NCBI GenBank assembly: GCA_037379345.1
Contig: CM074518.1
Span: 682,001 to 746,000, forward strand
DNA length: 64,000 nucleotides
Source: Perna viridis
Lineage: Eukaryota
Direction of reading: 5' to 3'
Below the pieces are notes generated by a model. It saw only the letters and a list, made by a program, of their open reading frames with translations, did not search any database and was not told the origin of the DNA. Each line of letters begins with the position of its first letter. Within the stretch, counting starts at the first letter, position 1. This document shows, one piece after another, positions 1-34,995 of the stretch. Both the position numbers and the translations under genes were made by a program.

Positions 1-660
1 TTTGTTCTCAGCTTGATTGATCGCTATGGAAACCTGAATATAAACATTGGAGGCAATAGCAAACATGAAGTGGCAGTTGATGGGAAAGGCTTTATAGCTG
101 CTTATTTAAGGGCTTTTTTAAGTACAATAGACTTAAACACAGACTTTAATGTCCAATTTAACCTGTCAACATGTATCCCAAAGGTAAGCAAACCTAATGA
201 GGACAACATCTACATTTTTAGTTTTCTTTACTTCTTTGGATTTATTTTTGTTGTCATGCAGGCATATGGTCTACGGTTGAGATGCAAAATTGCAACATTT
301 TTTTATCCAGAAAGAGATGAAGAGAGAAACAAGTTCCTCCAAGAAAAGATCTGTCTCAAGAGAAAATCTTATTTTAGTTGGATGAGACAACACATACTCT
401 CAAGGAATAAACAATTTCATATTGAAAATAGAATCACTATTCGTGGCTGGCTTCAATATAAATATCCTGTCTATGCCCGATTCTTCAGCTTTTGCCTTCC
501 AACAAAAAAGCAGTGCCTGAACTGTGATGTGGACTATGATGGAAAAAAAAGATTTTCAGTCTGTCCTGTCTGTAATTCAAACTACTGTGAGGAATGCTTT
601 ATTCATGAAATGAAAAATAACTGTGTTGTATGTGATACTAGGAATAAATCAAGAAAATAG
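1..660 (+). CDS. DCST-like gene A, 3' part of terminal coding exon (DC-STAMP domain protein, DCST1/2-sneaky-SPE-42 family); gene begins upstream of the window
   Basis: Open frame from base 1 to TAG at 658-660. It encodes the last TM helix (IYIFSFLYFFGFIFVVM), the family motif AYGLRLRxKIAxFFYPERxxER and a C-terminal CxxC-x12-CxxC-x4-CxxC-x9-CxxC (C4C4 RING-like) domain. About 86% aa identical (30 differences in 214 aa, hand count) to 17888-18547. Confidence 0.93.
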   Translation, partial: FVLSLIDRYGNLNINIGGNSKHEVAVDGKGFIAAYLRAFLSTIDLNTDFNVQFNLSTCIPKVSKPNEDNIYIFSFLYFFGFIFVVMQAYGLRLRCKIATFFYPERDEERNKFLQEKICLKRKSYFSWMRQHILSRNKQFHIENRITIRGWLQYKYPVYARFFSFCLPTKKQCLNCDVDYDGKKRFSVCPVCNSNYCEECFIHEMKNNCVVCDTRNKSRK

Positions 661-13741: not shown

Positions 13742-13901
13742 NNNNNNNNNNNNNNNNNNNNNNNNNNNNNNNNNNNNNNNNNNNNNNNNNNNNNNNNNNN
13801 NNNNNNNNNNNNNNNNNNNNNNNNNNNNNNNNNNNNNNNNNNNNNNNNNNNNNNNNNNNNNNNNNNNNNNNNNNNNNNNNNNNNNNNNNNNNNNNNNNNN
13901 N
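13742..13901. other. Assembly gap (160 N)
   Basis: Run of N. Confidence 1.
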
Positions 13902-14251
13902 TTACTTCCAAAATATGGATAGCTGAATGAATTGTCTAGCAGGAGACTAATAGATTCAGAAAGTTGAAGCCCTGTTAGGCAGAATTTTTTTTCCATTCGA
14001 CAAAGATTCAAAATGATTTTTAAAACAAGTGTTTTAGTCATGGAAAATGTGATTGAACCAGTTCTGTGAGAAATGAGGTGAAGGTCAATACTAATGAGTT
14101 ACGTCTTTCTTACAAATGAGGAGAGGAGGGTAAAGTTTGAAAAAAGGGAGAGGGTCAAATTTCACTTAGTTATTTACAAGACTAAGTTCACATGTCAACA
14201 AAATATCCATATCCATATTTAATTTGTAATATTTGTTCCAACAGAAAAGCC

Positions 14252-15202
14252 ATGTACAAGGTTTCTTTTTCCTATAATGCTGATGCAAAGACAGATATCA
14301 ATCTTAAAGTTGGAGACATAATCACACAAGTAGAAGATGTTGGAAATGGTTGGTCATTGGGGTATAATGCATCATCAGGTAAAACAGGAACCTTCCCAAC
14401 AGAATTTATTATAAAAAAGGAATCGTTCAAAAACAAAATCAAAAGACTCTCACTGGCAAAGAGATCTTCAGACAAGATTAAACAGTCTCCAGTCAAGGCC
14501 AGTGAGGGGACCTTAATCCCCAGGGAGAAGGCAAAGATACCTGACAACATTCTCCACAGAAGACTTACATATCATTCTGGCAATAAGCAGGTAATAAGTG
14601 TAAAACTTCCAAATTCTATTATAAGACCAATTAAAACAGCCCAACATACCATACTTAGAAGTAGTCTTAGGAAGAAAAAAATCCTGAATAGTTTCTTTGG
14701 TTTTGTTGGCGGATTAATTGCTAGTGGAATTCTGTATGTTCTCCTGCGATACAGTTATGACTATTCTATAGAGACATCAGGCTGGCTTACCTTAGGATTT
14801 TCTGTCCCTATTTGTGTAGGGATGACACTATCTACACATATGCGTTGCATCATACTTTTAATGGTGCCAAATTTATTTACTGGAAAAGGCAGGACTGTCC
14901 TTATGTCAATTATTTTTGCCAAACTTTTAGCTGGGCCTGTTGTCAATATTGCATATAATGCTCAACAAGCATCTGAATCTATGGCATGTGCCCAGGAGCT
15001 AATTTACAACCAAACTCATCAACTCAAAAGACAACTAGAGGGGCCAATGCGCAGAATTGAAAAAACTATATACAATGGACTTGTGAAAGTTAGGGATGTA
15101 GCTCAAGGTATCAAGGACTTTATTCAGCCAGTATTGAAGGTCATAGACAGCTTCACAAGTGGGTTGGAAAAAGCTGGAAATGCCCTTAAAACAGCAGCTG
15201 AT
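14252..15202 (+). CDS. DCST-like gene B, coding exon 1: SH3 domain, basic linker, N-terminal TM segments, start of ectodomain
   Basis: Acceptor TTCCAACAG| at 14244, then GCCATG. SH3 signature YKVSFSYNADAKTDINLKVGDII..GNGWSLG..GKTGTFPTEFI. DCST motifs RCIILLMVPNLFTGKGR and GPVVNIAYN..ESMAC. Donor GAT|GTAAGT, phase 0. Confidence 0.9.
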
Positions 15203-16258
15203 GTAAGTCATATCATGTTTGATCCATAGTATTTAACTAGAAATATTGCGAGCAAGCTCTCAAAAGAAACCACTCACTTCAAACAGAGTTATGTAAAAAT
15301 TGTAAGTTCAGGCATGATGATTTTATGGATTTTTGGCATAAATCTATCTAAGGAAACTTAGCTTTTTTCCTGTCATCTTCTCACTTCATTCAGTTTCATC
15401 CTACCTGCATTTTGCATACATTTTATTAATCTTTTTTTTTTTTTTCTTTTTTTTTTTTTTTTTGACATTTGAGTATATAAATTTCTCTTTTGATATTAAC
15501 TGACACAGTGCATGAGTACTTTGATAAGAATGTGCCTTATCACATACAGTGTCCAATCCAACTTTTTGCATCTTTAGGTAGATTTTTGCCCCATCTCATT
15601 GACCATTTATATCTATAGGTAGTTTTTTGCCCACTCCCACAAACCCTTGAAGGTAAGTTTTGTATCAGGGCAATCCCAAGGACTTCCCACATGTTTTTTT
15701 TCTTTAGAAAATTTGACTGGAGTATAACACTAGTGCTTATTAATTTTCAAATTTTTGTATGGCTATTTTTCATCCTACTGAAAGGTTCTCAGAATGAAAC
15801 CCATATTGTAAACAAGCTTAATACAACCAAGGAGGTTAAATCTGTGGGGACAGGTATGGCTACAGCATTAAAACTTGATACAACTTGGACTTTCCAAAAA
15901 TGGAAAATGATCTTGTTGTCAGGACCTTTCACTGAAAGGTGTGTTTACACTTGGTAAATACCTTTTTGTTTCTAGTGTTGTTTTGTTTTGTCTTACTTTA
16001 AACATAATTTATTTATTATTATTATTTTTTTTTTTTTGGGGGGGGGGGGGTATTTCCTTAAACATTTGGAGCCAAAACTTCCAAAATATATCCCAACTGT
16101 CCTTTTATGTGGTGGATACAATTTCATAGATATCTATTTTCTCATATTTCTCTATTTTGTACAACTGCAATTCATTTTATAAAAAGATGTTTTCAAAAGG
16201 ACTCTTTATTTTCTTATTGTTACCATTATTGTTTATAGCCCAAACTTTATCTTATCAG

Positions 16259-16875
16259 AAATGTTCAAGTGGAGTTCAGTATGCCAAATCTAAGTGTGTG
16301 GATGGTATCAATGGAGCTAAAAGTGCCTGTGAGAGAGAACTCAGAAAAATTGATCCCACTAATAAAATCATTAACTTTAGTAAAGATACCTCAAACAAGG
16401 TTGTTGGATTTGGTAAAGATGCCAAGGGTAAAATTGTTGATTTTGGTAAAAGTATTGGAGATGGCATCAAAGGATTTTTTGGAAAAAAGAGAAAAAAAAG
16501 AGGAGCCATGATTGAGCAGGAAAAGGCAGCAATTGCATCAGCAAAGCAACTTATTGGTAGGGTAGAGAGTAGAAAACAACAGAAGATTAGAATGAACCCA
16601 TCAAACCAAGAAACATTCCTTACAAAGATTTCCCTGGACAAACCATCAACTAATGGAAATAACAATCTTGTAGAAAGCACACACTTTCCAAAACTGAACT
16701 TAAAAAATATATCTCATCAAAGCTTAATCCATAAAACAAGTCTGACAAGACAACTCCAATCAACAACAAGAAATCTAAGAACACCACTCGAACCAACAAG
16801 CAGTCTTACACTATCAGTCCAATCAACAAGCAGTCTGAAAACACCACTAAAACTGGCAATACATTCAATACAAAG
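16259..16875 (+). CDS. DCST-like gene B, coding exon 2 (Cys-rich ectodomain with large insertion)
   Basis: Acceptor CTTATCAG| (phase 0). KCSSGVQYAKSKCVDGINGAKSACE aligns with gene C exon 2 ECDKVIGKVYRKCVNGINDAYTKCKE. Donor AAG|GTAAAT (phase 2) joins the next exon in frame. Confidence 0.82.
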
Positions 16876-17262
16876 GTAAATCATATTTGATGTATTCTTT
16901 TTTTTTTTTTTTTGCACAAGATCATTGTCACAATAATTTATTGGTTGAAACTTGACCAAAATTAATGTGGTAACAAAAAGTTACCTGATACTTATAGGTA
17001 TTCATGGGTATCAAATAATCAATCATATCACAAACAATAATCAATGATACCATTGATTTATTTCAATCCAAACACAATCCAATTTTCATCTCAGTTCTTC
17101 AATTTTCTCAATGTTAGCGCGAAAGTATAGTTCAACTTTAGTTTTCCAATAGTTAATTTTCCTTTTCTTAAAACTTATAGCCCTTTTCTTCCATTAATTA
17201 AAAGCTGTATCTATTTTATCAGTTAGATTTTCTATAATTATCTATACTATTTTATATTTCAG

Positions 17263-18547
17263 ATATAAGCGGTTAAGTCTGCTAGACAAAATCTGTATTG
17301 CCTTAGACATTAGTGCTATATGTCAAGTCGTACAGTTGGGAGAATATGTAGTCTGTACACCTTTAAAATTCTTCTCCGACCTGATTGGCCTGACTACCAA
17401 TGGTATAAAGAAAGCCGTCTCCTCTGTGACTAACTTTTTTTACTTTGATTTTGATGGCAATTTTGATTCAACAGGAGACATCTCCTCATCAAAAACTGCA
17501 AAACAAATAGTATCAGAGGTGAAAGCAGACATTTTGTCTAAATTGGCAAAGTTTTCTGAAGCTGCAAGTATATTTGGGTATATAATGAGTTTAGCATTGT
17601 TAATACTATTCAGTAAGTCAGCTATATACCTACGGAAATTCTTGAGCAAGGACCGTTATGACAATTTCTACATAACTACTTCATTTAAGCAATATGACCT
17701 TGAATGTAGGGTAAATGGCAACAGCTCAGTTCTGCCTCTAAAAAGAGGAGAAAGGAGCAAGTATGTAGACACAAGGTCTCTCTTTCTGGTGTCTAAAGAG
17801 ATTGCTCACTTTAAACAGGGGTTTGGGAAGGTATTAATTCATCTCCTTATTGCAGCAGTAATCATCGTCTTTGATTACACCTTGTACTTTGTTCTCAGCT
17901 TGATTGATCGCTATGGAAACCTGAATATAAACATTGGAGGCAATAGCAAACTTGATGTATCAGTTGATGGGAGTGGGTTTATAGCTGCTTTCTTGAGGGC
18001 TTTTCTAAGCACAATAGACTTAAACTCAGATTTCGGTGTTGAATTTAACCTTACAGTATGTATTCCAAAGGTAAGCAAACCTAATGAGGACAACATCTTC
18101 ATTTTTAGTTTCCTTTATTTCTTTGGATTTGTTTTTGTTGTCATGCAGGCATATGGCTTAAGATTAAGACGCAAAATTGCAACATTTTTCTTTCCAGAAA
18201 GAGATGAAGAGAGAAACAAGTTCCTCCATGACAAGATCTGTATCAAAAGAAAATCATTTTTTGGTTGGATGAGACAACATATACTCTCTCGAAACAAACA
18301 ATTTCATATTGAAAATAGAATCACTATTCGTGGCTGGCTTCAATATAAATATCCTGTCCTTGCCCAATTCTGTAGCATTTGCCTTCTGACCAAAAAACAA
18401 TGCTTGAACTGTGACATGGACTATGATAAAAAAATAAGATTCTCAGTCTGTCCTGTCTGTAATTCAAACTACTGTGAGGAATGCTTTATTCATGAAATGA
18501 AAAATAATTGTCTTGTGTGTGATACTAGGAATAAATTCCAAAAATAG
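17263..18547 (+). CDS. DCST-like gene B, terminal coding exon (DC-STAMP domain, TM helices, C4C4 RING); whole protein 950 aa
   Basis: Acceptor ATTTCAG|A, in frame with the 17336 ORF. Motifs YLRKFLSKDRYDNFYIT, VLPLKRGER, AYGLRLRRKIATFFFPERDEER and a C4C4 RING. TAG at 18545-18547. Confidence 0.95.
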
Positions 18548-18559
18548 CACTACTGCTAA

Positions 18560-18845
18560 TACCAAATATAACCATTGCATGTTCAGAGACTGACCGTTGC
18601 TTTAACCAATTATAACCACTACATGTACTGAGTCTGACTGTTGTTTTAACTTGTTATAACCAATACATGTACCAAGTCTGACTGTTGTATTAACTTATTA
18701 TAACCAATACATGTACTGAGTCTGGCTGTTGCTCTAACCAATTATAACGAATAAATGTATCAAGTCTGGCTGTTGACTTAACCAAATATAACCATTGCAT
18801 GCACCAAAAATGATTCAATACATGTACAGAGTACAACTGTTGCTT
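18560..18845. repeat. Degenerate ~45 bp tandem repeat immediately 3' of the gene B stop codon
   Basis: TATAACCAATACATGTAC..AGTCTGACTGTTG units. Confidence 0.7.
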
Positions 18846-19585: not shown

Positions 19586-21600
19586 ATAACATTACTACAT
19601 TTGTACAATTAAAGGATTATAAAAAAGAACTGATCAAACCTGAAACCATTATGCCCTTTTGGTTTGATGCTACATTTGTACAGTTAAAGGATTATAAAAA
19701 AGAACTGGTCAAACCTGAAACCATAATGCCCTTTTGGTTTGATGCTACATTTGTACAATTAAAGGATTATAAAAAAAAGAACTGGTCAAACCTGAAACCA
19801 TAATGCCCTTTTGGTTTGATGGTATTTACTATAACATCACTACATTTGTACAATTAAAGGATTATAAAAAAAAGAACTGGTCAAACCTGAAACCATAAAG
19901 CCCTTGTGGTTTGATGGTATTTACTATAACATTACTACATTTGTACAATTAAAGGATTATAAAAAAGAACTTGTCAAACCTGAAACCATAATGCCCTTGT
20001 GGTTTGATGATATTTACTATAACACTACATTTGTACAATTAAAGGATTATAAAAAAGAACTGGTCAAACCTGAAACCAAAATGCCCTTTTGGTTTGATGC
20101 TACATTTGTACAATTAAAGGATTATAAAAAAGAACTGGTCAAACCTGAAACCATAATGCCCTTGTGGTTTAATGGTATTTACTATAACATTACTACATTT
20201 GTACAATTAAAGGATTATAAAAAAGAACTGGTCAAACCTGAAACCATTATGCCCTTTTGGTTTGATGCTACATTTGTACAGTTAAAGGATTATAAAAAAG
20301 AACTGGTCAAACCTGAAACCATAATGCCTTTTTGGTTTGATGCTACATTTGTACAATTAAAGGATTATAAAAAAAAGAACTGGTCAAACCTGAAACCATA
20401 ATGCCCTTTTGGTTTGATGGTATTTACTATAACATCACTACATTTGTACAATTAAAGGATTATAAAAAAGAACTGGTCAAACCTGAAACCATAAAGCCCT
20501 TGTGGTTTGATGGTATTTACTATAACATTACTACATTTGTACAATTAAAGGATTATAAAAAAGAACTGGTCAAACCTGAAACCATAATGCCCTTGTGGTT
20601 TGATGGTATTTACTATAACACTACATTTGTACAATTAAAGGATTATAAAAAAGAACTGGTCAAACCTGAAACCAAAATGCCCTTTTGGTTTGATGCTACA
20701 TTTGTACAATTAAAGGATTATAAAAAAGAACTGGTCAAACCTGAAACCATAATGCCCTTGTGGTTTGATGGTATTTACTATAACATTACTACATTTGTAC
20801 AATTAAAGGATTATAAAAAAGAACTGGTCAAACCTGAAACCATAATGCCCTTGTGGTTTGATGGTATTTACTATAACACTACATTTGTACAATTAAAGGA
20901 TTATAAAAAAGAACTGGTCAAACCTGAAACCATTATGCCCTTTTGGTTTGATGCTACATTTGTACAGTTAAAGGATTATAAAAAAGAACTGGTCAAACCT
21001 GAAACCATAATGCCCTTTTGGTTTGATGCTACATTTGTACAATTAAAGGATTATAAAAAAAAGAACTGGTCAAACCTGAAACTATAATGCCCTTTTGGTT
21101 TGATGGTATTTACTATAACACTATATTTGTACAATTAAAGGATTATAAAAAAGAACTGGTCAAACCTGAAACCATTATGCCCTTTTGGTTTGATGCTACA
21201 TTTGTACAGTTAAAGGATTATGAAAAAGAACTGGTCAAACCTGAAACCATAATGCCCTTTTGGTTTGATGCTACATTTGTACAATTAAAGGATTATAAAA
21301 AAAGAACTGGTCAAACCTGAAACCACAATGCCATTTTGGTTTGATGGTATTTACTATAACATCACTACATTTGTACAATTAAAGGATTATAAAAAAGAAC
21401 TGGTCAAACCTGAAACCATAATGCCCTTGTGGTTTGATGGTATTTACTATAACATTACTACATTTGTACAATTAAAGGATTATAAACAAGAACTGGTCAA
21501 ACCTGAAACCATAATGCCCTTTTGGTTTGATGCTACATTTGTACAATTAAAGGATTATAAACAAGAACTGGTCAAACCTGAAACCATAATGCCCTTTTGA
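19586..21600. repeat. Composite minisatellite, 24 units of 75/90/93 bp
   Basis: Core CTACATTTGTACAATTAAAGGATTATAAAAAAGAACTGGTCAAACCTGAAACCATAATGCCCTTTTGGTTTGATG, with or without GTATTTACTATAACA(TTA). Units are highly homogeneous. Confidence 0.97.
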
Positions 21601-24595: not shown

Positions 24596-26600
24596 GTAAG
24601 ATATGAATATTTATAAATCTACCAGAGAGCAATCTTGGCTCAGACTTATATAAAAGATCACAGATAAGATATGTGCATCTTTAATGCCATTCAAGAAAAG
24701 TTCACGCTCAAATTGTACACCACAGGTAAGATATGAGTATCTTTCATGTCATTCGAGAACAGTCTTCGCTCAAATTGTAGACCACAGGTAAGATATGAAT
24801 ATCTTTCATGTCATTCGAAAACTGTCTTCACTCATATTGTAGACCACAGGTAAGATATGAGTATCTTTCATTGTCATTCGAGAACAGTCTTCGCTCATAT
24901 TGTAGACCACAGGTAAGATATGAGTATCTTTCATGTCATTCGAGAACAGTCTTCACTCGTATTGTAGACCACAGGTAAGATATGAGTATCTTTCATTGTC
25001 ATTCGAGAACAGTCTTCGCTCATATTGTAGACCACAGGTAAGATATGAGTATCTTTCATGTCATTCAAGAACAGTCTTCACTCATATTGTAGACCACAGG
25101 TAAGATATGAGTATCTTTCATGTCATTCGAGAACAGTCTTCACTCAGATTGTAGACCACAGGTAAGATATGAGTTTCTTTCATGCCATTCATCTACAGTC
25201 TTCACTCAGACTGTAGACCACAGGTAAGATATGAGTATCTTTCATGCCATTCGACCAGAGAGCAATCTTGGCGCAGACTATAGACCACAAGTTAGATATG
25301 AGTAATAATCACTCCACCAGAGAACAACCTTGGCTCAGAATAAAGACCACAGTAAGACATGAGTATCTTTCATACCATTCGACCAGAGAGCAATCTGGGC
25401 GCAGACTATAGACCACAAGTTACATATGAGTATTAATCATTCTACCAGAGAACAATCTTGGCTAAGACTATAGACCACAGTAAGATATGAGAATCTTTCA
25501 TGCCATTCAAGAACAGTCTTGGCTCAGACTGTAGACCACAGATCAGATATCAGTGTCTTTCATGCCATCTGGAACAACCTTGGTTCAGACTTTGTTTGGA
25601 AGAGAACAAATTTAGATTATAGACCAGAGGTAAGATAAAGAGTATTTATCATTCCATCTGAGAACAATCTTGGTACTGATTGGAAATTGTTGCTAAAACA
25701 TGAGACTGAGAACAATAAGGCTCAAACTATAGACCACTAATAAGATATGAGTATTTATCATTCAATCTTAGATCAACCTTTGCTCTTACTGTAAACTGTT
25801 GGTAAGATAAAAGTATTTATCATTCCATCTCAGAACAATTTGACTCAAACTGTAGACTACTGGTAAGATAAAAGTATTTATCATTCCATCTCATAACAAT
25901 TTGACTCAAACTGTAGACTACTGGTAAGATAAAAGTATTTATCATTCCATCTCAGAACAATTTGACTCAAACTGTAGACTACTGGTAAGATAAAAGTATT
26001 TATCATTCCATCTCATAACAATTTGACTCAAACTGTAGACTACTGGTAAGATATGAGTATTATCATTCCACCTGAAAATAATTATGGCTATGACTGTAAA
26101 CTGCTGGTAAGATGTGAGTATTATCATTCCATCTCAGAACAATTTGACTCAAACTGTAGACTACTGGTAAGATATGAGTATTATCATTCCACCTGAAAAT
26201 AATCATGGCTATGACTGTAAACTGCTGGTAAGATGTGAGTATTATCATTCCATCTGAGAATGATCATGGCTATGACTGTAAACTGCTGGTAAGATGTATT
26301 ATCATTCCACCTGAGAATAATCATGGCTATGACTGTAAACTGCTGGTAAGATGTGAGCATTATCATTCCATCTGAGAATAATCATAGCTTTGATTGTAAA
26401 CTGCTGGTAAGATGGGAGTATTATAATTCCACCTGAGAATAATCATGGCTATGACTGTAAACTGCTGGTAAGATGTGAGCATTATCATTCCTTCTGAGAA
26501 TAATCATAGCTTTGATTGTAAACTGCTGGTAAGATGGGAGTATTATCATTCCATCTGAGAATAATCATGGCTATGACTAAAATGCTGATAAGATGGTAAG
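24582..26600. repeat. ~60-63 bp minisatellite with gradually changing subfamilies
   Basis: TGTAGACCACAGGTAAGATATGAGTATCTTTCATGTCATTCGAGAACAGTCTTCACTCATAT units grade into CTACTGGTAAGATAAAAG and CTGCTGGTAAGATG variants. Confidence 0.95.
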
Positions 26601-27224
26601 ACTATAAACCAATGTGCAACTAAGATTACTTTTTATCAATGCTTGTTGCCATATTAGTTGCTTTTGGTTAGTACCCCTTAATGTTTAGCTTAATTGTCCA
26701 TTAAATACATCTCAGTCAATGAATCTGATTTTATCAGCTATTTCTTTGTTCTTCAATTGTTTTGTGTGATATTTATTTTGGCAGGCTACTGTTGTGATAC
26801 TAAAATTAACGGCAATATCAAATGACATCATTATGTCAAATCAATTGTGACATTACCGATATACAGATTAATGTCAGTTATGAATGTTTCAAAAGAAAAA
26901 AAACATCTCAACCTATCTGAACTCAATGTGATATTTTCTGTCTCTATTTCAAATTGCTGTTTCTCTGTATGTAAATGCATTATTCATTTGCATGAAAAAC
27001 TTCACTGAAAGCCATCAATACAAAAACAAATACTAGCCAAATCAAATCCATTAGTATGTGATAACACAACATTTGACCTAGCTCCCAAAGGTCACACTGG
27101 GTCCTTCTAGTAGAAGAGCTCTTTCAGTCTGACAAGGGTTACTCTGCTAGATTAATCCATTGATTGTTTTTCAATGCAACTTAGGTCACCACATCATGGC
27201 AAGATCATTTAATGCTATTCTAGA

Positions 27225-27790
27225 AAAGCTCTCTTAGCATAGCAAGGACATTATAAGAGGTTACTCAACTAGATGAGCTCTCTTAGCATGGCAAGGACAT
27301 TATAAGAGGTTACTCAACTAGATGAGCTCTCTTAGCATGGCAAGGACATTATAAGAGGTTACTCAACTAGATGAGCTCTCTTAGCATGGCATGGGCATTA
27401 TGAATAGATTACTCCACTAGATGAGCTCTCTTAGCATGGCAGGGCATTATGAATAGGTTACTCCACTAAATGAGCTCTCTTAGCATGGCATGGGCATTAT
27501 GAATAGGTTACTCCACTAAATGAGCTCTCTTAGCATGGCAGGGGCATTATGAATAGGTTACTCCACTAAATGAGCTCTCTTAGCATGGCAGGGCATTATG
27601 AATAGGTTACTCCACTAAATGAGCTCTCTTAGCATGGCAGGGCATTATGAATAGGTTACTCCACTAAATGAGCTCTCTTAGCATGGCATGGGCATTATGA
27701 ATAGGTTACACAACTAGATGAGCTCTGTCAACATGGCAGAGGAATTAAATAAACAAATTGGGTTACTCAACTAGAAGAGTTCTCCCAGCC
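27225..27790. repeat. 49 bp minisatellite x~11
   Basis: GAGCTCTCTTAGCATGGCAGGGCATTATGAATAGGTTACTCCACTAAAT units. Confidence 0.95.
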
Positions 27791-27836
27791 TAACAAGGGC
27801 ATTAAACACATGGTTTATAATTTTCATTATTTTCAG

Positions 27837-28544
27837 ATGTTCATTATGACTACAATGGAAGGTGAAGATGAATCTGATGTTTTTGAGCAAGTTAACAAGG
27901 TTGAAGGTGAAGGGGAACCTCATGTATTTGAGCAGAGATACAAGGGAGCAAATATTGAAAAGAAGAATCCAGGAGTTACATTTGCCAACATGTTATTTAA
28001 AAGTGATCGTCATACATTCACTTGTCTGAAAGCTGTTTTTGGGATATTTGGTGGTATTTTTGCTGGCGGTATCCTGTTTGTTATCCTTGTATACAGTTTT
28101 AACTATCCTTACAATCTTGCTGGTTATATTTGCTGTGGATTTACTTTTCTAGCTTGCCTTTTACTTGCCATTTCTGTTCATGTCAGATGTATCATGGTTC
28201 TTACTATACCAAGTTTGTTCACAAGTCGAGGAAGAGTAGCCATATTAGCCTTGATATTTGGATTACTTTTGTCAAGACCAATACGAAATATCTCCAACAA
28301 CATGTCAGAAGTTTCTCGCAGCATGGCATGTAGCACAGAGCTGTTCCATAATCAGACTTACTCCCTCCGACAACAACTGGAAATACCTATTGAAAAGATT
28401 AAGGCTGCCTTGCAAAGTCAGGGAGAGGACATCAAAAAGATAGGTGATACTATAGAAGAGGCTATTGAACCTATATACAAGGCTCTTGAGGCAGTGAAAC
28501 ACCATGTAAAAGAGGTCAGTGGAGCTCTGGACTATGCATCTAAG
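27837..28544 (+). CDS. DCST-like gene C, coding exon 1 (no SH3; short acidic N-terminus, TM segments)
   Basis: Acceptor TTTTCAG|ATG. FGIFGGIFAGGILF, RCIMVLTIPSLFTSRGR and SMACSTELFHNQT are homologous to gene B exon 1. Donor AAG|GTATCA is phase 0 at the homologous position. The exact start Met is uncertain (27837, 27846 or 27855). Confidence 0.9.
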
Positions 28545-28907: not shown

Positions 28908-29005
28908 GAATGTGACAAAGTAATTGGAAAAGTGTACAGAAAATGTGTTAATGGTATCAATGATGCATACACAAAATGCAAAGAAACATTAAAAAATGTA
29001 GCAAG
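28908..29005 (+). CDS. DCST-like gene C, coding exon 2 (98 nt; absent from the ORF track)
   Basis: ACTTTAG|GAA TGT..GCA AG|GTAAGT. Encodes ECDKVIGKVYRKCVNGINDAYTKCKETLKNVA(R). Phases 0/2 fit both neighbours. Confidence 0.88.
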
Positions 29006-29064: not shown

Positions 29065-30200
29065 AGTTCTGTCATTTACAGTAATGGTAATTCTGTCATT
29101 TATAGTGATGTCACTTCTGTAGTTTACAATGTTGTCAGTACTGTAACTTACAGTGATGTCACTTCTGTTATTTACAGTGATGTTACTTCTGTAGTTTAAA
29201 CTGTTGTAGTACTGTAACTTACAGTGATGTCACTTCTGTTATTTACAGTGATGTCACTTCTGTCATTTACAGTGATGTCACTTCTGTAGTTTACACTGTT
29301 TTCAGTACTGTAACTTGCAGTGATGTCACTTCTGTTATTTACAGTGATGTCACTTCTGTAGTTTACACTGTTTTCAGTACTGTAACTTACAGGGATGTCA
29401 TTTCTGTTATTTACAGTGATGTCACTTCTGTAGTTTACACTGTTTCCAGTACTGTAACTTACAGTGATGTCACTTCTGTAGTTTACACTGTTGTCAGTAC
29501 TGTAACTTACAGTGATGTCAGTTATATCATTTGTAGTTTACAGTGATTTCAGTACTGTTATTTATAGTGATGTCACAGAACAGTGATGTCACTTCCATTA
29601 TTTACAGTGATGTCACTTCCGTAGTTTACACTGTTGTCAGTACTGTAACTTACAGTGATGTCAGTTATATCATTTGTAGATTACAGTGATTTCAGTACTG
29701 TAATTTATAGTGATGTCACAGAACTATCATTTACAGTGATGTCACAGAACTATCATTTACAGTGATGTTAATTCTATAATTTACAGTGTTGTAAGTTCTG
29801 TCTTAAGAGTGATGTCAGTTGTTCCATTTGCTATTATGTCAGTTCTTTCATTAACAGTGATGTCAGTTCTGATATTTTCTGTGATGATAGTTCTGCCATT
29901 TACAGTGATATTACTTCTGCTTTTTACAATGACTCATAGTTCTGTCATACACAGAGATAACACACAACTACCATTTACACAGATGTCAGTTCTGTCATTG
30001 ACAGTTGTGTCAATTCTGTCATTTACATTAATGGCAATTCTGTCATTTACAGTGATGTCAGTTTTGTCATTCACACTGATATCTGTTCTGTCATTCACAC
30101 CAATATCAGTTCTGTCATTCACACTGATATCAGTTCTGTTGTTTTCAATGACTCGCAGTTCTTTCATAATAGTGATGTCACAAACTTTCATTTACAGTGA
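29065..30200. repeat. 24 bp minisatellite (intronic)
   Basis: TTTACAGTGATGTCACTTCTGTCA-like units with higher-order variants. Confidence 0.92.
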
Positions 30201-31522: not shown

Positions 31523-32597
31523 CAGAGAAACCTGTCTAAATAGAACCCTGAATCATCCAACAACCTGTCTAAACAGAACCCTGAATCATCCAATGACCTG
31601 TCTAAATAGAACCATGAATCATCCAATAACCTGTCCAAACAGAATCATGAATCATCCAATAACCTGTCTAAATAGAAACATGAATCATCCAATGACCTGT
31701 CTAAAGAGAACCATGAATCGTCCAATGACCTGTCTAAACAGAACCATGAATCATCCAATGACCTGTCTAAACATAACCCTGAATTGCCCAATAACCTGTC
31801 TAAACAGAATCATGAACCATCCAATAACATGTCTAAATAGAACCCTGAATCATCCAATGACCTGTCTAAACAGAACCATGAATCATCCAATGACCTGTCT
31901 AAACAAAATTATGAATCATCCAATAACCAGTCTAAACAGAACCATGAATCATCTAATAACATGTCTAAACAGAGCCCTGAATCATCCAATAACCTGTCTA
32001 AACTGAACCCTGAATCATCCAATAACCTGTCTAAACAAGACTATTGAGAGTCCCTTTATATCAGTTTATTAATTAATTAATTAATTTGTTAATTAATTTT
32101 GACCCTGGATAAACCAAAACCATTTGAAGATCCAAAAGGTCTTCAGTTTAGGAACATGTTTCACTGCAAAGGTCCAAAAGGGGTTCAGTTTACATATGTT
32201 TCACTGTAAAGGTCCAAAAAGGGATTCTGTTTAGAAATGTTTTACTGTAAAGGGCCAAAAGGGGTTCAATTTAAACATGTTGAACTTCGGAGGTCAAAAA
32301 GGGGTTCTGTTTAGAAATGTTTTACAGTAAAGGACCAAAAGGGGTTCAGTTTAAACATGTTTTACTGTAAAGGACCAAAAGGGGTTCAGTTTAAACATGT
32401 TTTACTGTAAAGGATCAAAAGGGGTTCAGTTTAGACATGTTAAATTTCAGAGGTCCAAAAGGGGTTCTGTTTAGAAATGTTTTACTGTAAAGGGTCAAAA
32501 GGGGTTCAGTTTAAACATGTTTTACTGTTAAGGTCCAAAAGAGTTCAGTTTAGACATGTTTTATTGTAAAGGTCCAAAAGGGGTTCAGTTTAGACAG
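31523..32597. mobile_element. Tc1/pogo-type MITE remnant whose ends are amplified into 33 bp (~15x) and 40 bp (~11x) tandem arrays
   Basis: The left end TA|CAGAGAAACCTGTCTAAATAGAACCC is the near reverse complement of GGGTTCAGTTTAGACATGTTTTACTG|TA in the right array. Confidence 0.65.
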
Positions 32598-32707: not shown

Positions 32708-33944
32708 ATATGTTCCAAATTTTGATGATGTACTTTGCCAAACACTTACCATTGATGAAGTCTGTAGAGTGGTCAGCACAAATATCCTGTGTTCTCCAGT
32801 CAAGGTATTGGATCAAGCTGCTGAAAACATTGCTCAACACTTGATTAACCTTGTCAATCAAATCAAAAAATGGTTTAAGTTTGAGATCACTAATAAATCT
32901 ACAGCTGACAAAGTTTACAATGCATCTAAAACAGCCAAGGAACTTATACAAGAAGTAGGCACAGCACTGACCGAAAGGAAGGGCACCTTCACAATAGCAG
33001 TTGATATTTTCAACAAATGTTTGGCACTTTCTCTCATTCTACTTCTCATCCAGGCAGTATTTTACTTAAAGAACTACTTAGCAAAAAATGAATACGACAA
33101 CATCTATATTACCTCCAAGTTTAAAGAGTATGATTCAGCATGTAAAGAGAGAAACGAGCAAACCGTTCTTCCTCTCCGTAAAAAGGAACGAAGGACATAC
33201 ATCAATACCATACTACCAAGAATGTCATCACGTGAGCTCAGAGAAATGGAGATGGGTACTGTCCTGCTCCTACTGCACATGCTTCTAGCTGCACTGATCA
33301 TATTTATTAACTATGTGTTTTACTATATCTTGTACCTTGTTAATAGATATGGTAAGGTCAACGTAGAGGTCACTGGAGAAAGTAAAATCAACCTCAGAGT
33401 CAAAGGTGGTACTATGGCAGATTTCATAAACCTGTTCATTAAAAACATAAATATTGAAAATACATATGAAGCTAGCTACAACACAACACTCTGTCTTCCA
33501 GATCCGACAGCACCTGGCATTGATGATATCCCTGTCCTCTGTGGGGCTTATTTCACTGCGTTTATGTTTGTCATAATGCAAGCTTATGGGAAAAGACTGA
33601 ATAGAAAGATATGTGCTTTTTACTATCCAGAACAAGAGCAAGATCGCATAACTTTCTTGCATAAAAAAATGCTCTATAACAGAAAGCAAGAACACATGTT
33701 CATAAAGCAACATGTAAAGTCTCTACAATTTCAAAAGCAGGCAGAAAAAAGAATGTCGCTTAAAAACATTATACGTCCATGGTCCAAAGGTGTGGTAAAT
33801 GATAATTTCTGTATGAAATGTGGGGAAGATCAAAACTCAACTAATTCAATGAATGCATGTAAGCACCAAACATGTAAAGCAACATATTGCAAAGACTGTT
33901 ATACTGATTTTGGACAGACATGTCCTATTTGCAGAAAATATTAG
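32708..33944 (+). CDS. DCST-like gene C, terminal coding exon (DC-STAMP domain, C4C4 RING); whole protein ~680 aa
   Basis: Acceptor ATTTCAG|A (phase 2). Motifs YLKNYLAKNEYDNIYIT, VLPLRKKER, AYGKRLNRKICAFYYPEQEQDRI and CMKC..CKHQTC..YCKDC..CPIC. TAG at 33942-33944; AATAAA at 33955-33960. Confidence 0.95.
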
Positions 33945-34084
33945 AAAACTAAGCAATAAAATGTCATATGTAAGGAGAACACTTATCTGTACTAAACTAC
34001 TGGCTTTTGTTTTTGTTGAATAGCAAAATTCATGGCAACCAATTACTCAAAGCATGAATGCACCTTTTATCATAACAAAAAAAG

Positions 34085-34995
34085 TTTCAACCATAACCCC
34101 CTTTACCATTGCAATGAAAAGCTTCAACCATAACCCCTTTTATCATGAAAATGAAAAGCTTCAACCATAACCCCCTTTATCATTGCAATGAAAAGCTTCA
34201 ACCAACACCCCTTTTACCATGGCAATGAAAAGCTTCAACCAATACCCCCTTTCCCATTGCAATGAAAAGCTTCAACCAATACCCCCTTTACCATGGCAAT
34301 GGAAAGCTTCAACCATTACCCCCTTTACCATGGCAATGAAAAGCTTCAACCATTACCCCCTTTACCATTGCAATGAAAAGCTTTAACCAACACCTCCTTT
34401 ATCATGAAAATGAAAAGCTTCAACCAATACCCCCTTTATCATGGCAATGAAAAGCTTGAACCATTACCCCCTTTACCATGGCAATGGAAAGCTTCAACCA
34501 ACATCCATTGCAATGAGAAGCTTCAACCAATACCCCCTTTACCATTGCAATGAAAAGCTTCAACCATTACCCCCTTTACCATGGCAATGGAAAGCTTCAA
34601 TCATTACCCCCTTTACCATTGCAATGAAAAGCTTCAACCAATACCCCCTTTACCATGGCAATGAATAGCTTCAACCAACACCCCCTTTACCATTGCAATG
34701 AAAAGCTTCAACCAACACCCCCTTTATCATGAAAATGAAAGCTTCAACCAATACCCCCTTTATCATGGCAATGAAAAGCTTGAACCATTACCCCCTTTAC
34801 CATGGCAATGGAAAGCTTCAACCAACATCCATTGCAATGAGAAGCTTCAACCAATACCCCCTTTACCATTGCAATGAAAAGCTTCAACCAATACCCCCTT
34901 TACCATTGCAATGAAAAGCTTCAACCATTACCCCCTTTACCAAGGCAATGAATAGCTTCAACCAATACTCCTTTACCATGGCAATGAAAAACTTT
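34085..34995. repeat. 37 bp minisatellite (~24 units) downstream of gene C
   Basis: GCAATGAAAAGCTTCAACCAATACCCCCTTTACCATG units, with an internal higher-order duplication. Confidence 0.95.

What the first reader, a model, noticed from the sequence alone, without database searches (positions are those of the whole stretch)
16364..17300. 173-aa ectodomain expansion with two furin-type sites: possible proteolytically primed fusion factor
Seen: exon 2 is 617 nt in gene B versus 98 nt in gene C, with the same flanking phases. The extra sequence sits between two conserved Cys clusters. It contains KKRKKR (ends at 16501), and splicing to exon 3 creates RYKR (16874-16875 + 17263-17272). Both match R-X-K/R-R. 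Cleavage at both would release ~128 aa and expose a moderately hydrophobic new N-terminus, LSLLDKICIALDISAIC, with the flanks possibly held by disulfides. Known: dual furin excision primes RSV F; it is not, to my knowledge, described for DCST proteins. The priming role and the extracellular topology are inference.
Basis: partly seen in the sequence, partly recalled or inferred. Interest (0 to 1): 0.8.

Follow-up and report, generated by a model that had tools for sequence, protein, structure and literature searches.

The report
Cleavage-site-flanked tip insert in mussel DCST
A mussel-type sperm-fusion-family membrane protein (DCST2/Sneaky-like) carries a real, spliced-in, fast-evolving 173-residue insert at the outer tip of its extracellular stalk, bracketed by two conserved furin-type motifs, so it is probably cut by a convertase there, but cleavage and any role in membrane fusion are still untested.

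Summary
Gene B is a three-exon DC-STAMP/DCST2-like gene. Exon 2 is 617 nt (16259-16875) against 98 nt in gene C (28908-29005), with the same phases. KKRKKR ends at 16501, and RYKR is made across the exon 2/3 junction.

- **Splicing:** an RNA-like contig shows exactly that GT..AG joint. No in-frame internal donor could skip the insert.
- **Conservation:** the insert recurs in paralogs A and D, in Mytilus orthologs and, in the same exon and phase, in Pinctada. All mytilid copies keep site 1 (FGKKR[KR][KR]R before A/G/Q) and site 2 (R-x-K-R, with P3 free: Y/H/I/S). Pinctada keeps only site 2. The insert-less C-type paralogs read R-Y-V-P there.
- **Spacer:** between the sites the sequence is hypervariable, about 55 to 370 aa. 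Gene A carries a 25-copy, 11-aa Ser/Thr/Pro-rich repeat.
- **Location:** hydropathy, an N-terminal SH3 domain, a C-terminal Cys-rich tail, published OC-STAMP topology and AlphaFold2 models place the insert as a disordered loop at the distal tip of the extracellular stalk.

I favour convertase processing of this loop (about 0.5). A class-I-type "fusion peptide priming" reading is weakly supported. This is a new variant of a known family, with no wet evidence.

The parts
14192..15202 (+). Gene B exon 1. The start is the ATG at 14192 or, matching the Mytilus N-terminus, at 14252. It holds an N-terminal SH3 domain (about 14255-14410), three hydrophobic helices TM1-3, and the first long stalk helix with the family-conserved C-x-x-E-L-x-x-N-Q-T sequon. 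The donor is gat|gtaagt.
   Evidence: Pfam SH3_1 at E 7.4e-07. Sequence of the donor. Three TM segments by hydropathy and the NQT sequon. 100% self-match, with 86% and 78% identical copies in A and D.
16259..16354 (+). Ancestral part of exon 2: 32 codons forming Cys cluster 1 (KCSSGVQYAKSKCVDGINGAKSACERELRKID). It is homologous to the whole of gene C exon 2.
   Evidence: The cysteines are nearly invariant in alignment A1. Predicted helix over residues 3-31, pLDDT 68-78.
16355..16873 (+). The 519-nt (173-codon) insert. It is specific to the B-type (A, B, D, Mytilus, Pinctada) and absent from the C-type and from brachiopod, arthropod and vertebrate DCST proteins in the alignment.
   Evidence: No Pfam family. 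Only 8 proteins at E<=0.001 among 1.84 billion representatives.
16484..16501 (+). Site 1, K-K-R-K-K-R followed by G. This is a furin-type R-x-K/R-R motif with basic P5 and P6. It is preceded by a conserved I-G-x-G-F/I-x-x-x-F-G.
   Evidence: Gene A has KKRKRR|Q, D has KKRRRR|A, Mytilus has KKRKRRR|A. Pinctada lacks it. pLDDT is 43-51, unstructured.
16502..16588 (+). Conserved helical module just after site 1 (GAMIEQEKAAIASAKQLIGRVESRKQQK). It would belong to the excised piece if both sites are cut.
   Evidence: Invariant columns A83 M84 E88 A91 I92 A95 Q97 L98 in A3. Predicted helix 86-110, pLDDT 63-66. dN/dS is 0.21-0.51 here.
16589..16873 (+). Hypervariable Ser/Thr-rich tail of the insert (36% S+T+P in B). 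It corresponds to the 25 x 11-aa mucin-like repeat of gene A (62% S+T+P) and to about 30 aa in Mytilus.
   Evidence: 30-41% aa identity between paralogs, against 72-86% in the flanks. Tandem repeat in A. Composition. No predicted structure, pLDDT 40-48.
16874..16875 (+). The last two bases of exon 2 (AG). With A at 17263 they form the Arg at P4 of site 2. The same split Arg codon is present in gene C and in Pinctada.
16876..17262 (.). Intron 2 (387 nt, GT..AG, phase 2). Reading through the donor gives an immediate stop (AG|G TAA).
   Evidence: Joint in run X12 skipping 387 nt. Sequence.
17263..17272 (+). The rest of site 2. Together with 16874-75 it reads R-Y-K-R, and cleavage would fall before L at 17273.
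   Evidence: A has RHKR|F, D has RIKR|L, Mytilus has RSKR|G, Pinctada has RSKR|S across the same junction. The C-type has R-Y-V-P.
17273..17356 (+). Cys cluster 2, the hydrophobic tip segment (LSLLDKICIALDISAICQVVQLGEYVVC). It begins the return helix of the stalk.
   Evidence: Mean KD 1.44. The equivalent Mytilus segment scores 1.78 over 19 aa. C448 and C457 are nearly invariant.
17357..18547 (+). The rest of exon 3: return stalk helix, TM4-6 with the DC_STAMP domain, a cytoplasmic Cys-rich (RING-like) tail, and the stop codon.
   Evidence: PF07782 at E 3.5e-49. Three TM segments.
28908..29005 (+). Gene C exon 2 (98 nt), the insert-less comparator. Gene C exon 1 is about 27810-28544 and exon 3 starts at 32708.
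   Evidence: Gene C is only 31-34% identical to B.
1..660 (+). The 3' end of gene A, a tandem B-type copy. Its exons 1 and 2 lie upstream of the window at G000:C8:675855-680904.
   Evidence: PF07782 at E 3.5e-20..

Best explanation
**Shown**
- Gene B encodes a DCST2/Sneaky/SPE-42-type six-pass membrane protein of a mytilid-like bivalve, with a cytosolic N-terminal SH3 domain and a cytosolic Cys-rich C-terminus.
- Its long exon 2 is genuinely coding. It adds a 173-residue loop at the distal tip of the extracellular helical stalk, between the two Cys clusters that all DCST proteins share.
- The loop is modular: a conserved head with a polybasic furin-type motif; a conserved short helix; a hypervariable, repeat-prone Ser/Thr/Pro-rich (mucin-like, probably O-glycosylated) spacer; and a second R-x-K-R motif that straddles the exon 2/3 junction, 5-6 residues before Cys cluster 2.

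**Inferred**
- In the secretory pathway of the male germ cell, a proprotein convertase cuts at site 2, the older site shared with Pinctada.
- In mytilids it also cuts at site 1.
- This converts the single chain into an N-terminal half (SH3, TM1-3, stalk helix 1) and a C-terminal half (tip segment, stalk helix 2, TM4-6, RING-like tail).
- The halves stay together through the helical hairpin and probably through disulfides between the Cys clusters.
- The glycosylated spacer is released or left dangling. The net effect is maturation, or uncapping, of the stalk tip.

Whether this is needed for gamete binding or fusion is not addressed by any data here.
For: **Family**
- PF07782 at E 3.5e-49 and SH3 hits.
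- Mytilus orthologs are named DCST2-like or sneaky-like.

**Reality of the exon**
- Spliced joint at 16875|17263.
- No in-phase internal donor beyond the first 35 nt.
- Open frame kept in A (1262 nt), D (617 nt) and Pinctada (323 nt) with the same phases.
- RefSeq Mytilus models include the insert.

**Extracellular location**
- Three TM segments lie before the loop and three after it.
- SH3 fold at the N-terminus: rmsd about 1.0-1.3 A to solved SH3 domains.
- The C-terminus is reported as intracellular with a non-canonical RING finger (PMC8989947).
- In OC-STAMP both termini were shown to be intracellular, and the Asn of the homologous C-x-x-E-x-x-L-x-x-L-L-N-T-T motif after TM3 was shown to be glycosylated (PMC4456411). 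Gene B keeps C-x-x-E-L-x-x-N-Q-T in the same loop.
- The DCST1/2 ectodomain is described as a stalk with a tip (preprint 10.64898/2026.05.13.724128).

**Tip position and accessibility**
- In the AlphaFold2 model of ortholog P0005, a long helix 213-347 runs out from TM3. Residues 343-454 are at pLDDT below 50 and contain both motifs (382-388, 438-442). The return helix spans 454-496.
- The exon 2 product of B on its own gives the same picture.

**Conservation pattern typical of a convertase site**
- P4, P2 and P1 are invariant. P3 is free (Y/H/I/S) and P1'-P4' vary, across A, B, D, three or more Mytilus species, two Mytilus paralog groups and Pinctada.
- The spacer between the sites runs at 30-41% identity and varies from about 55 to 370 aa.
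- Insert-less C-type paralogs have R-Y-V-P at the same junction, so the K-R pair came with the insert.

**Enzymes present**
- 23 genomic matches to the convertase P domain, all over Pfam's cut-off.
Against: - There is no protein-level evidence at all.
- P1' is Leu in B and D, which is unfavourable for furin by published rules (my knowledge).
- Site 1 lies inside a roughly 45-aa conserved block, so its conservation may reflect another function of that block.
- The helix after site 1 is conserved although it would be discarded.
- Site 1 DNA is a purine run (GAAAAAAAA x 2.2). Such runs arise easily and could act as a splicing enhancer for an unusually long exon.
- The K-R of site 2 sits at the edge of the strongly conserved exon 3, so within this genome its retention could be hitch-hiking.
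- Independent lineages are few: this genus, Mytilus, two unidentified Logan samples and Pinctada.
- RNA support rests on one low-depth contig (depth 3.4, 30 letters on the short side). The tissue of expression is unknown.
- The structure models are of low confidence (pLDDT 65 and 52).
Confidence: 0.5

Rival explanations
1. Uncleaved, fast-evolving tip decoration. The insert is a disordered, glycosylated, repeat-prone appendage on the egg-facing tip of a sperm DCST protein. It is shaped by sexual selection or relaxed constraint. The polybasic motifs act as charge patches, for example binding sulfated egg-coat glycans or anionic lipids, or they are structural. They are not cleavage sites.
For: - The spacer is hypervariable in length and sequence, with dN/dS 0.6-0.7.
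- Gene A holds a 25-copy S/T/P-rich repeat.
- Minisatellites abound in this region.
- The DCST1/2 tip is reported to be under diversifying selection in Murinae.
- Site 1 is embedded in a conserved block with a conserved helix.
- P1' is Leu at site 2 of B and D.
Against: - A mere charge patch does not predict invariant P4/P2/P1 with a free P3 at site 2 across genera.
- It also does not predict that the two motifs bracket exactly the variable part, or that the K-R pair is absent from insert-less paralogs.
- Exposed R-x-K-R motifs in secretory-pathway loops are usually cut (established knowledge of furin-like convertases).
Confidence: 0.3
2. Dual furin excision of a 128-aa peptide primes a fusogen in the manner of RSV F. 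It frees LSLLDKICIALDISAIC as a new N-terminal fusion peptide that inserts into the egg membrane.
For: - Both motifs are conserved in mytilids. KKRKRR in gene A is, by my recollection, the same letters as the second RSV F site.
- The segment after site 2 is the most hydrophobic non-TM stretch: KD 1.78 over 19 aa in P0005.
- An independent preprint proposes the hydrophobic DCST1/2 tip as the membrane-inserting element, shielded in vertebrates by TMEM81.
Against: - The post-cleavage segment has four charged residues and three family-wide cysteines. It is the start of a structural helix that is also present in uncleavable relatives.
- No trimeric class-I architecture is evident, and no solved fold matches the core.
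- Pinctada has one site only.
- It is not established in any organism that a DCST protein is itself a fusogen.
Confidence: 0.12
3. Annotation or assembly artefact. The extra 519 nt are intronic, or an exonised minisatellite that is not translated, and the real mRNA resembles gene C.
For: - Runs X1, X2 and X9 cover introns as well as exons, so they do not prove transcription.
- The region is rich in open minisatellite 'ORFs'.
Against: - The frame is open through 617, 617, 1262 and 323 nt in four genes with conserved phases.
- A conserved protein module is subject to purifying selection, dN/dS 0.2-0.5.
- The spliced joint is at the predicted donor.
- No in-phase alternative donor exists.
- The insert is present in RefSeq models of four Mytilus species.
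Confidence: 0.03
4. Cytoplasmic loop. KKRKKR is a nuclear-localisation-type or phosphoinositide-binding patch on the cytosolic face.
For: KKRKKR fits a classical monopartite NLS pattern (my knowledge).
Against: - The topology has three TM segments on each side, with cytosolic SH3 and RING-like ends.
- The homologous loop of OC-STAMP was shown to be glycosylated.
- The flanking cysteines are conserved and the repeats are mucin-like.
Confidence: 0.03

Closest known systems
DCST2 / DCST1 / Sneaky / SPE-42 / SPE-49 (DC-STAMP domain family, PF07782)
   Same: It shares the DC_STAMP domain, the six hydrophobic helices, a long helical extracellular stalk between TM3 and TM4 with 3+3 conserved cysteines at its far end, the conserved N-Q-T sequon, and a Cys-rich cytoplasmic tail. 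Paired paralogs also lie next to each other in the genome (B-type beside C-type, twice).
   Different: It has a 75-420-aa insert at the stalk tip flanked by R-x-K/R-R motifs, seen so far only in pteriomorph bivalves. It also has an N-terminal SH3 domain, which is likewise present in Lingula DCST2 (P0022). Vertebrate, arthropod and brachiopod members in alignment A1 have no insert there.
RSV fusion protein F0: two furin sites release pep27 (my knowledge)
   Same: Two polybasic motifs bracket a dispensable, glycosylated, poorly conserved peptide. A hydrophobic segment follows the second site, and the halves remain linked.
   Different: RSV F is a single-pass trimeric class I fusogen with a canonical uncharged fusion peptide. 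Here the protein is a six-pass protein, the downstream segment is charged and Cys-bonded, part of the would-be excised piece is conserved, and cleavage has not been shown.
Epithelial sodium channel alpha subunit: double furin cleavage in the extracellular loop releases an inhibitory tract (my knowledge)
   Same: It is a multi-pass membrane protein. Two furin motifs within one extracellular loop excise an internal peptide, and the remaining fragments stay assembled. The excision acts as an activation step.
   Different: The fold and function are unrelated. The ENaC tract is 26 aa and not mucin-like.
Proinsulin C-peptide and furin-cut two-chain receptors (insulin receptor, integrin alpha chains, Notch S1) (my knowledge)
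   Same: Basic sites flank or sit in a loop between Cys-bearing segments, so the products stay joined as a two-chain protein.
   Different: These are soluble or single-pass proteins. In none of them does a hypervariable repeat spacer take the place of the excised piece.
Mucin-like domains that cap functional surfaces of viral glycoproteins, for example Ebola GP (my knowledge)
   Same: A Ser/Thr/Pro-rich, variable, disordered domain sits on the distal functional tip and can be removed by host proteases.
   Different: Removal of the Ebola domain is by endosomal cathepsins, not at paired furin motifs. The proteins are not homologous.

Membership tests
DC-STAMP domain family (DCST1/2, Sneaky, SPE-42/49) | DC_STAMP domain (PF07782) over Pfam's gathering score | tested here: met
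   Gene B exon 3 scores 167.7 bits, E 3.5e-49, covering 1-191 of 191 profile positions. Genes A and C also match.
DC-STAMP domain family (DCST1/2, Sneaky, SPE-42/49) | Five to six transmembrane helices with both termini intracellular | tested here: met
   There are three hydrophobic segments in exon 1, none in exon 2 and three in exon 3. Ortholog P0005 has six. The SH3 domain at the N-terminus implies a cytosolic location. The orientation itself is inferred from PMC4456411 and PMC8989947 and was not measured.
DC-STAMP domain family (DCST1/2, Sneaky, SPE-42/49) | C-terminal non-canonical RING finger with invariant cysteines | tested here: inconclusive
   A Cys-rich tail with the pattern C-x2-C ... 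C-x2-C-x4-C-x2-C ... C-x2-C is visible in B and aligns with the tails of other members. Pfam RING models gave only a weak hit, in gene C (E 0.0055).
DC-STAMP domain family (DCST1/2, Sneaky, SPE-42/49) | Sperm or testis expression and a requirement for fertilisation | not testable with these tools
   The runs are coded and of unknown tissue.
Furin / proprotein-convertase substrates | R-x-K/R-R motif | tested here: met
   Site 1 is R-K-K-R (16490-16501, within KKRKKR). Site 2 is R-Y-K-R across the junction.
Furin / proprotein-convertase substrates | The motif is exposed to the secretory-pathway lumen or the cell exterior | tested here: met
   By hydropathy topology and by homology to the glycosylated OC-STAMP loop. 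This is inferred, not measured.
Furin / proprotein-convertase substrates | The motif lies in an accessible, flexible segment | tested here: met
   pLDDT is below 50 around both motifs in P0005 (343-389 and 402-454), and 43-51 around site 1 in B. The models are of low confidence.
Furin / proprotein-convertase substrates | Favourable P1' (not an aliphatic hydrophobic residue) | tested here: inconclusive
   At site 1, P1' is G, Q or A, which is favourable. At site 2, P1' is L in B and D, which is unfavourable by Nakayama's published rule for furin (my knowledge). It is F in A, G in Mytilus and S in Pinctada.
Furin / proprotein-convertase substrates | Convertase genes are present in the genome | tested here: met
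   23 matches to PF01483, all over its cut-off.
Furin / proprotein-convertase substrates | Demonstrated cleavage | not testable with these tools
   No proteomic data were reachable. Three paper searches on DC-STAMP/DCST with furin, Mytilus or bivalves found no report of DCST processing.
Class I viral-type fusion proteins primed by cleavage | Cleavage directly upstream of an uncharged, Gly/Ala-rich hydrophobic fusion peptide | tested here: not met
   The 28 residues after site 2 hold D, K, D, E and three cysteines, with mean KD 1.44.
Class I viral-type fusion proteins primed by cleavage | Single-pass trimeric ectodomain with heptad repeats | tested here: not met
   This is a six-pass protein. 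The stalk is a helical hairpin, with only weak profile matches to antiparallel coiled coils. The oligomeric state was not tested.
Mucin-like (PTS) domains | Ser/Thr/Pro-rich tandem repeats in an extracellular segment | tested here: met
   Gene A has 25 copies of a 33-nt unit with 62% S+T+P. In gene B itself only a degenerate remnant is present (36% S+T+P, and no array found by TRF). Glycosylation was not tested.

The most novel reading that the evidence does not exclude
The insert is a built-in, convertase-removable cap on the hydrophobic tip of a DCST protein. In vertebrates that tip is proposed to be shielded by TMEM81, which is restricted to vertebrates. In pteriomorph bivalves a glycosylated, rapidly evolving pro-segment would shield the tip within the same chain. 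The segment would be cut out at the conserved R-x-K-R sites during sperm maturation or the acrosome reaction, turning DCST into a two-chain, disulfide-held, fusion- or binding-competent form. This would be the first proteolytic activation switch described for the DCST fertilisation machinery.
Probability: 0.15. Interest if true: 0.85.

Novelty: new variant of a known kind. Interest (0 to 1): 0.55.

Why it matters
DCST1/2 are the most widely conserved animal sperm proteins required for gamete binding and fusion. How they act is still unknown. A 2026 preprint proposes that the hydrophobic tip of their stalk is the membrane-active element and must be unshielded.

The bivalve genes described here place a disposable, hypervariable, probably glycosylated loop exactly on that tip, and they bracket it with conserved convertase motifs. 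If the loop is cut, it gives a simple handle on tip function. Cleavage-site mutants or convertase inhibitors could be tried in broadcast spawners, where in-vitro fertilisation is easy. It would also offer a candidate for species-specific gamete recognition in mussels. If the loop is not cut, it is still a clear case of rapid repeat-driven evolution at a gamete-interaction surface.

Tried and rejected
Every search used single exons by reference.
- Whole-protein topology and structure were read from the natural full-length Mytilus ortholog P0005 as a proxy.

**Searches that gave little**
- The word-index searches did little. P0005 whole gave 4 hits. P0005 residues 440-830 gave 10 hits. The A1 profile gave only exon-1 fragments. 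I therefore could not survey oysters, scallops, clams or gastropods, and the age of the insert is bounded only by Mytilidae plus Pinctada.
- No solved structure is related by sequence or by Foldseek; only the SH3 domain matched.
- The search of earlier findings by place returned nothing.

**RNA evidence**
- All listed runs are contigs of guessed kind. X1, X2 and X9 cover introns too and prove nothing about splicing. Only X12 gave the joint.

**Ideas rejected**
- An alternative start with a signal peptide. The ORF MFSKGLFIFLLLPLLFIAQTLSYQ upstream of exon 2 (16188-16258, also in Logan protein P0001) is the translated polypyrimidine tract of intron 1. P0002 shows the same kind of artefact with a different sequence.
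- An internal in-frame donor that skips the insert. None exists.
- A third R-x-R-R motif (RLRR after TM6 in P0005). It is cytoplasmic and juxtamembrane, so out of reach of convertases.
- Homology between the 33-nt minisatellite in gene C intron 2 and gene A's 33-nt coding repeat. The two units are not visibly similar. This was judged by eye only.

**Other**
- The masked run 13742-13901 was left alone.
Full report
**1. What is in the window**

The sequence is AT-rich (about 32% GC) eukaryotic DNA. It comes from a 723-Mb assembly; the window is G000:C8:682001-746000. Three plus-strand genes carry the DC_STAMP domain (PF07782):
- the 3' end of gene A (1-660);
- gene B (exon 3, E 3.5e-49);
- gene C (E 7.8e-50).

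Gene B has three coding exons:
- **Exon 1, 14192-15202.** The start is the ATG at 14192, or at 14252 to match Mytilus. The donor is gat|gtaagt.
- **Exon 2, 16259-16875.**
- **Exon 3, 17263-18547**.

Exon 1 opens with an SH3 domain (Pfam E 7.4e-07) and holds three hydrophobic helices. Exon 2 holds none. Exon 3 holds three more, followed by a Cys-rich tail.

**2. The observation**

Every number in the finding is right.
- Exon 2 is 617 nt in B and 98 nt in C (28908-29005).
- Both begin in phase 0 and end two bases into an Arg codon. That codon is completed by the first base of exon 3: AG|A in both genes.
- The first 32 codons of B exon 2 (C-x10-C-x10-C) align with the whole of C exon 2.
- The following 519 nt (16355-16873, 173 codons) are extra.
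- KKRKKR occupies 16484-16501.
- R-Y-K-R is formed by 16874-75 plus 17263-17272. It is followed by LSLLDKICIALDISAIC....
- The piece between the sites is 128 aa.

**3. Is the long exon real?**

- The donor AAG|GTAAAT matches 8 of 9 consensus positions. Beyond the first 35 nt there is no other GT in the right phase, so no frame-preserving isoform can skip the insert.
- I laid four public runs on 14100-18700. Run X12, labelled as a second organism but at least 99% identical, has a contig with a GT..AG joint that skips 387 nt at exactly 16875|17263. The same run has contigs inside exon 2 and almost no depth in intron 2.
- The other three runs cover introns as well and are uninformative.
- The evidence is thin: one contig, at depth 3.4. 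It is backed by the comparative data below.

**4. Relatives**

*Within the genome*
- The insert recurs in gene A, just upstream of the window. Its exon 2 is 1262 nt (L002:1501-2762).
- It also recurs in a third copy, gene D, at C8:2.045 Mb on the minus strand. Its exon 2 is again 617 nt (L003:1175-1791).
- Both are open throughout.
- D sits beside a second C-type gene, E. The B-type/C-type pair is therefore duplicated.
- The genome has two further, more divergent DC_STAMP loci.

*In other species*
- A full HMMER scan of 1.84 billion representative proteins with the exon 2 product found only eight proteins at E<=0.001.
- The informative ones are Mytilus proteins named 'DC-STAMP domain-containing protein 2-like' or 'protein sneaky-like', plus exon-sized fragments from Logan assemblies.
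- A domain-restricted word search added several sequences:
  - a Mytilus C-type protein;
  - Lingula DCST2, which also has an SH3 domain;
  - arthropod DCST1-like proteins;
  - vertebrate DCST2;
  - a Pinctada imbricata protein.
- In the alignment only the mytilid B-type proteins and the Pinctada protein have extra residues between the two Cys clusters.
- I checked the Pinctada gene itself. Its equivalent exon is 323 nt, in the same phases, and ends in the same split Arg codon (AG|G). The protein reads H-D-H-R-S-K-R|S-L-S-D-L-C.

**5. Anatomy of the insert**

The alignments show four modules.

*(i) A conserved head.* It reads DPTxxIINFGKD, then a spacer of variable length, then IGxGF..FG.

*(ii) Site 1.*

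| Copy | Motif and P1' |
|---|---|
| B | KKRKKR\|G |
| A | KKRKRR\|Q |
| D | KKRRRR\|A |
| Mytilus | KKRKRRR\|A |
| P0002 | KKRKRR\|A |
| P0006 | KKRRKR\|A |

Pinctada has no site 1.

*(iii) A conserved helix, AMTEQEKxAIxLAKQL.* It is predicted as helix 86-110 in B, at pLDDT about 65.

*(iv) A hypervariable tail.*
- It is about 30 aa in Mytilus and 95 aa in B and D.
- It is about 310 aa in A, where a 33-nt unit is repeated 25 times (87% matches). That unit encodes an 11-aa unit resembling TTSSLTTPIQQ, with 62% Ser+Thr+Pro.
- Tail identity between paralogs is 30-41%, with dN/dS 0.6-0.7. Exons 1 and 3 are 78-86% identical, with dN/dS 0.16-0.36.

*Site 2.* The tail ends in a conserved His followed by three variable residues. 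Site 2 comes next.

| Copy | Motif and P1' |
|---|---|
| B | RYKR\|L |
| A | RHKR\|F |
| D | RIKR\|L |
| Mytilus (both paralog groups, four species) | RSKR\|G |
| Pinctada | RSKR\|S |

P4, P2 and P1 never change. P3 and P1'-P4' do change. The insert-less C-type genes read R-Y-V-P at the same junction. The P4 Arg is therefore ancestral, and the K-R pair came with the insert.

**6. Where the loop sits**

- Hydropathy gives three TM helices before the loop and three after it, in B and in the full-length Mytilus ortholog P0005.
- The N-terminal SH3 domain is a cytosolic module. Its fold superposes on solved SH3 domains at about 1.0-1.3 A.
- The C-terminal tail corresponds to the intracellular non-canonical RING finger of DCST1/2 (PMC8989947).
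- In OC-STAMP both termini were shown experimentally to be intracellular. The Asn of ...C-V-T-E-G-S-L-E-S-L-L-N-T-T..., just after TM3, was shown to be glycosylated (PMC4456411).
- Gene B keeps the homologous ...C-A-Q-E-L-I-Y-N-Q-T... in the same loop. The TM3-TM4 loop is therefore luminal or extracellular.

An AlphaFold2 model of P0005 was built from 25 rows (mean pLDDT 65, pTM 0.48). It shows:
- one very long helix (213-347) running from TM3;
- a low-confidence region (343-454, pLDDT below 50) that contains both motifs;
- a return helix (454-496) leading back towards TM4.

The insert is thus at the far end of a helical hairpin stalk. This agrees with weak profile matches of this region to antiparallel coiled coils. 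It also agrees with the published description of a 'stalk-like DCST1/2 ectodomain' with a hydrophobic, positively selected tip (preprint 10.64898/2026.05.13.724128). The segment right after site 2 is the most hydrophobic non-TM stretch of the protein: KD 1.78 over 19 aa in P0005 and 1.44 over 28 aa in B.

**7. Mechanism**

What is shown:
- The loop is real, extracellular and disordered at the stalk tip.
- Two conserved furin-type motifs bracket its variable, mucin-like part.
- The genome carries many convertase P-domain loci.

What is inferred is cleavage by a convertase. I think cleavage at site 2 at least is more likely than not, for three reasons:
- the motif shows the textbook constraint pattern;
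- it is exposed;
- it arose together with the insert.

Cutting would leave two halves. They would be held together by the hairpin and probably by disulfides between the 3+3 cysteines. In mytilids it would also release a spacer of about 55-370 aa.

The closest working analogies, all from my knowledge, are:
- the double furin excision of an inhibitory tract from the extracellular loop of ENaC alpha;
- pep27 of RSV F;
- the proinsulin C-peptide.

Points against cleavage:
- P1' is Leu in B and D.
- The helix just after site 1 is conserved although it would be discarded.
- Site 1 DNA is a purine run that could have other causes.
- Independent lineages are few.
- No protein data exist.

**8.

- Membership of class I fusion proteins fails on the features I could test. 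The post-cleavage segment is charged and Cys-bonded, and the protein is six-pass.
- 'Works like' remains open. The insert caps exactly the element that the 2026 preprint proposes to be unshielded before fusion. The vertebrate shield, TMEM81, is stated there to be restricted to vertebrates. I give this 'removable cap' reading about 0.15.
- Searches on DC-STAMP/DCST with furin, Mytilus or bivalves returned no title on DCST processing. Term searches in the two DCST1/2 papers I checked for it found no mention either.

**9. Novelty and verdict**

The genes are already annotated in Mytilus as DCST2-like or sneaky-like, so the family assignment is not new. Three things appear to be undescribed:
- the tip insert;
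- its modular build;
- the conserved paired convertase motifs.

This is a new variant of a known kind. Interest is moderate to high for fertilisation biology, but the case is wholly computational.

**10. Limits**

- The joined protein of gene B was never assembled or searched.
- The tissue of expression is unknown.
- The structure models are of low confidence.
It is 56-61% identical to Mytilus in exons 1 and 3.

Noticed in passing
window 14255-14410 (gene B exon 1); also P0019, P0022: The DCST protein starts with an SH3 domain. One Mytilus paralog group has two SH3 copies, and Lingula DCST2 also carries one. A cytosolic SH3 on a DCST protein therefore seems to be a lophotrochozoan feature, absent from the vertebrate and arthropod sequences aligned here.
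   Followed up: partly
L002:1922-2743 (G000:C8:680064-680885, about 1.1-1.9 kb upstream of the window): Exon 2 of gene A contains a 33-nt unit repeated 25 times (87% matches). The array is open in frame and encodes an 11-aa repeat with 62% S+T+P. This is a coding minisatellite that makes the gene A insert about 2.4 times longer than that of B.
   Followed up: yes
G000:C8:2027501-2048978 (L003, L007, L010, L013, L014) and C8:2059152-2059573 (L016, L017): A second B-type/C-type gene pair (D and E) lies 1.3 Mb away on the minus strand. Nearby are exon-1-like fragments with in-frame stops, probably a pseudogene. Two more divergent DC_STAMP loci lie at C3:22.77 Mb and C7:37.55 Mb.
   Followed up: partly
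window 16874-16881; Mytilus proteins P0034, P0020, P0040: Reading through the exon 2 donor gives Arg and then a stop (AG|G TAA). RefSeq models in M. californianus include products that end exactly there (P0034, isoform X2, 442 aa; P0020, 520 aa). One product (P0040) starts just upstream of site 2. The two halves of the protein are thus also annotated as separate products. This may reflect intron retention or split models.
   Followed up: partly
window 16188-16258: An ATG-led ORF (MFSKGLFIFLLLPLLFIAQTLSYQ) runs in frame into exon 2 and looks like a signal peptide. It is the translated polypyrimidine tract of intron 1. It appears in a Logan ORF call (P0001). Contigs of X12 and X9 also cross the acceptor unspliced.
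   Followed up: partly
window 19595-21599: A large tandem array lies downstream of gene B, with units of 75/95 nt and higher-order periods of about 242-258 nt. Long open frames repeat ...FVQLKDYKKELVKPETIMPFWFD..., and Pfam gives only sub-threshold DUF6566 hits.
   Followed up: no
window 29065-30139, 31529-32037, 32127-32596 (gene C intron 2); 24655-26594; 27220-27747; 34080-34994: There are many minisatellites, several of them open in one frame. One in gene C intron 2 has a 33-nt period, between the exons that flank the insert position in B-type genes. This hints that the variable tail could have arisen from exonised repeat DNA. No sequence similarity to the gene A repeat was seen by eye.
   Followed up: no
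window 15472-16003 (gene B intron 1): All four runs laid have contigs here. X12 covers 15472-15831 at depth 10.9, higher than over the exons it covers. This may be a repeat or a separate transcript inside intron 1.
   Followed up: no
G000, 23 places (for example C4:40.72-40.89 Mb x3 and C13:0.53-0.59 Mb x3): The convertase P domain (PF01483) matches 23 places over its cut-off, some of them in tandem clusters. Some matches may be several exons of one gene or non-convertase proteins.
   Followed up: no
It may hide part of the promoter or 5' UTR.
   Followed up: no
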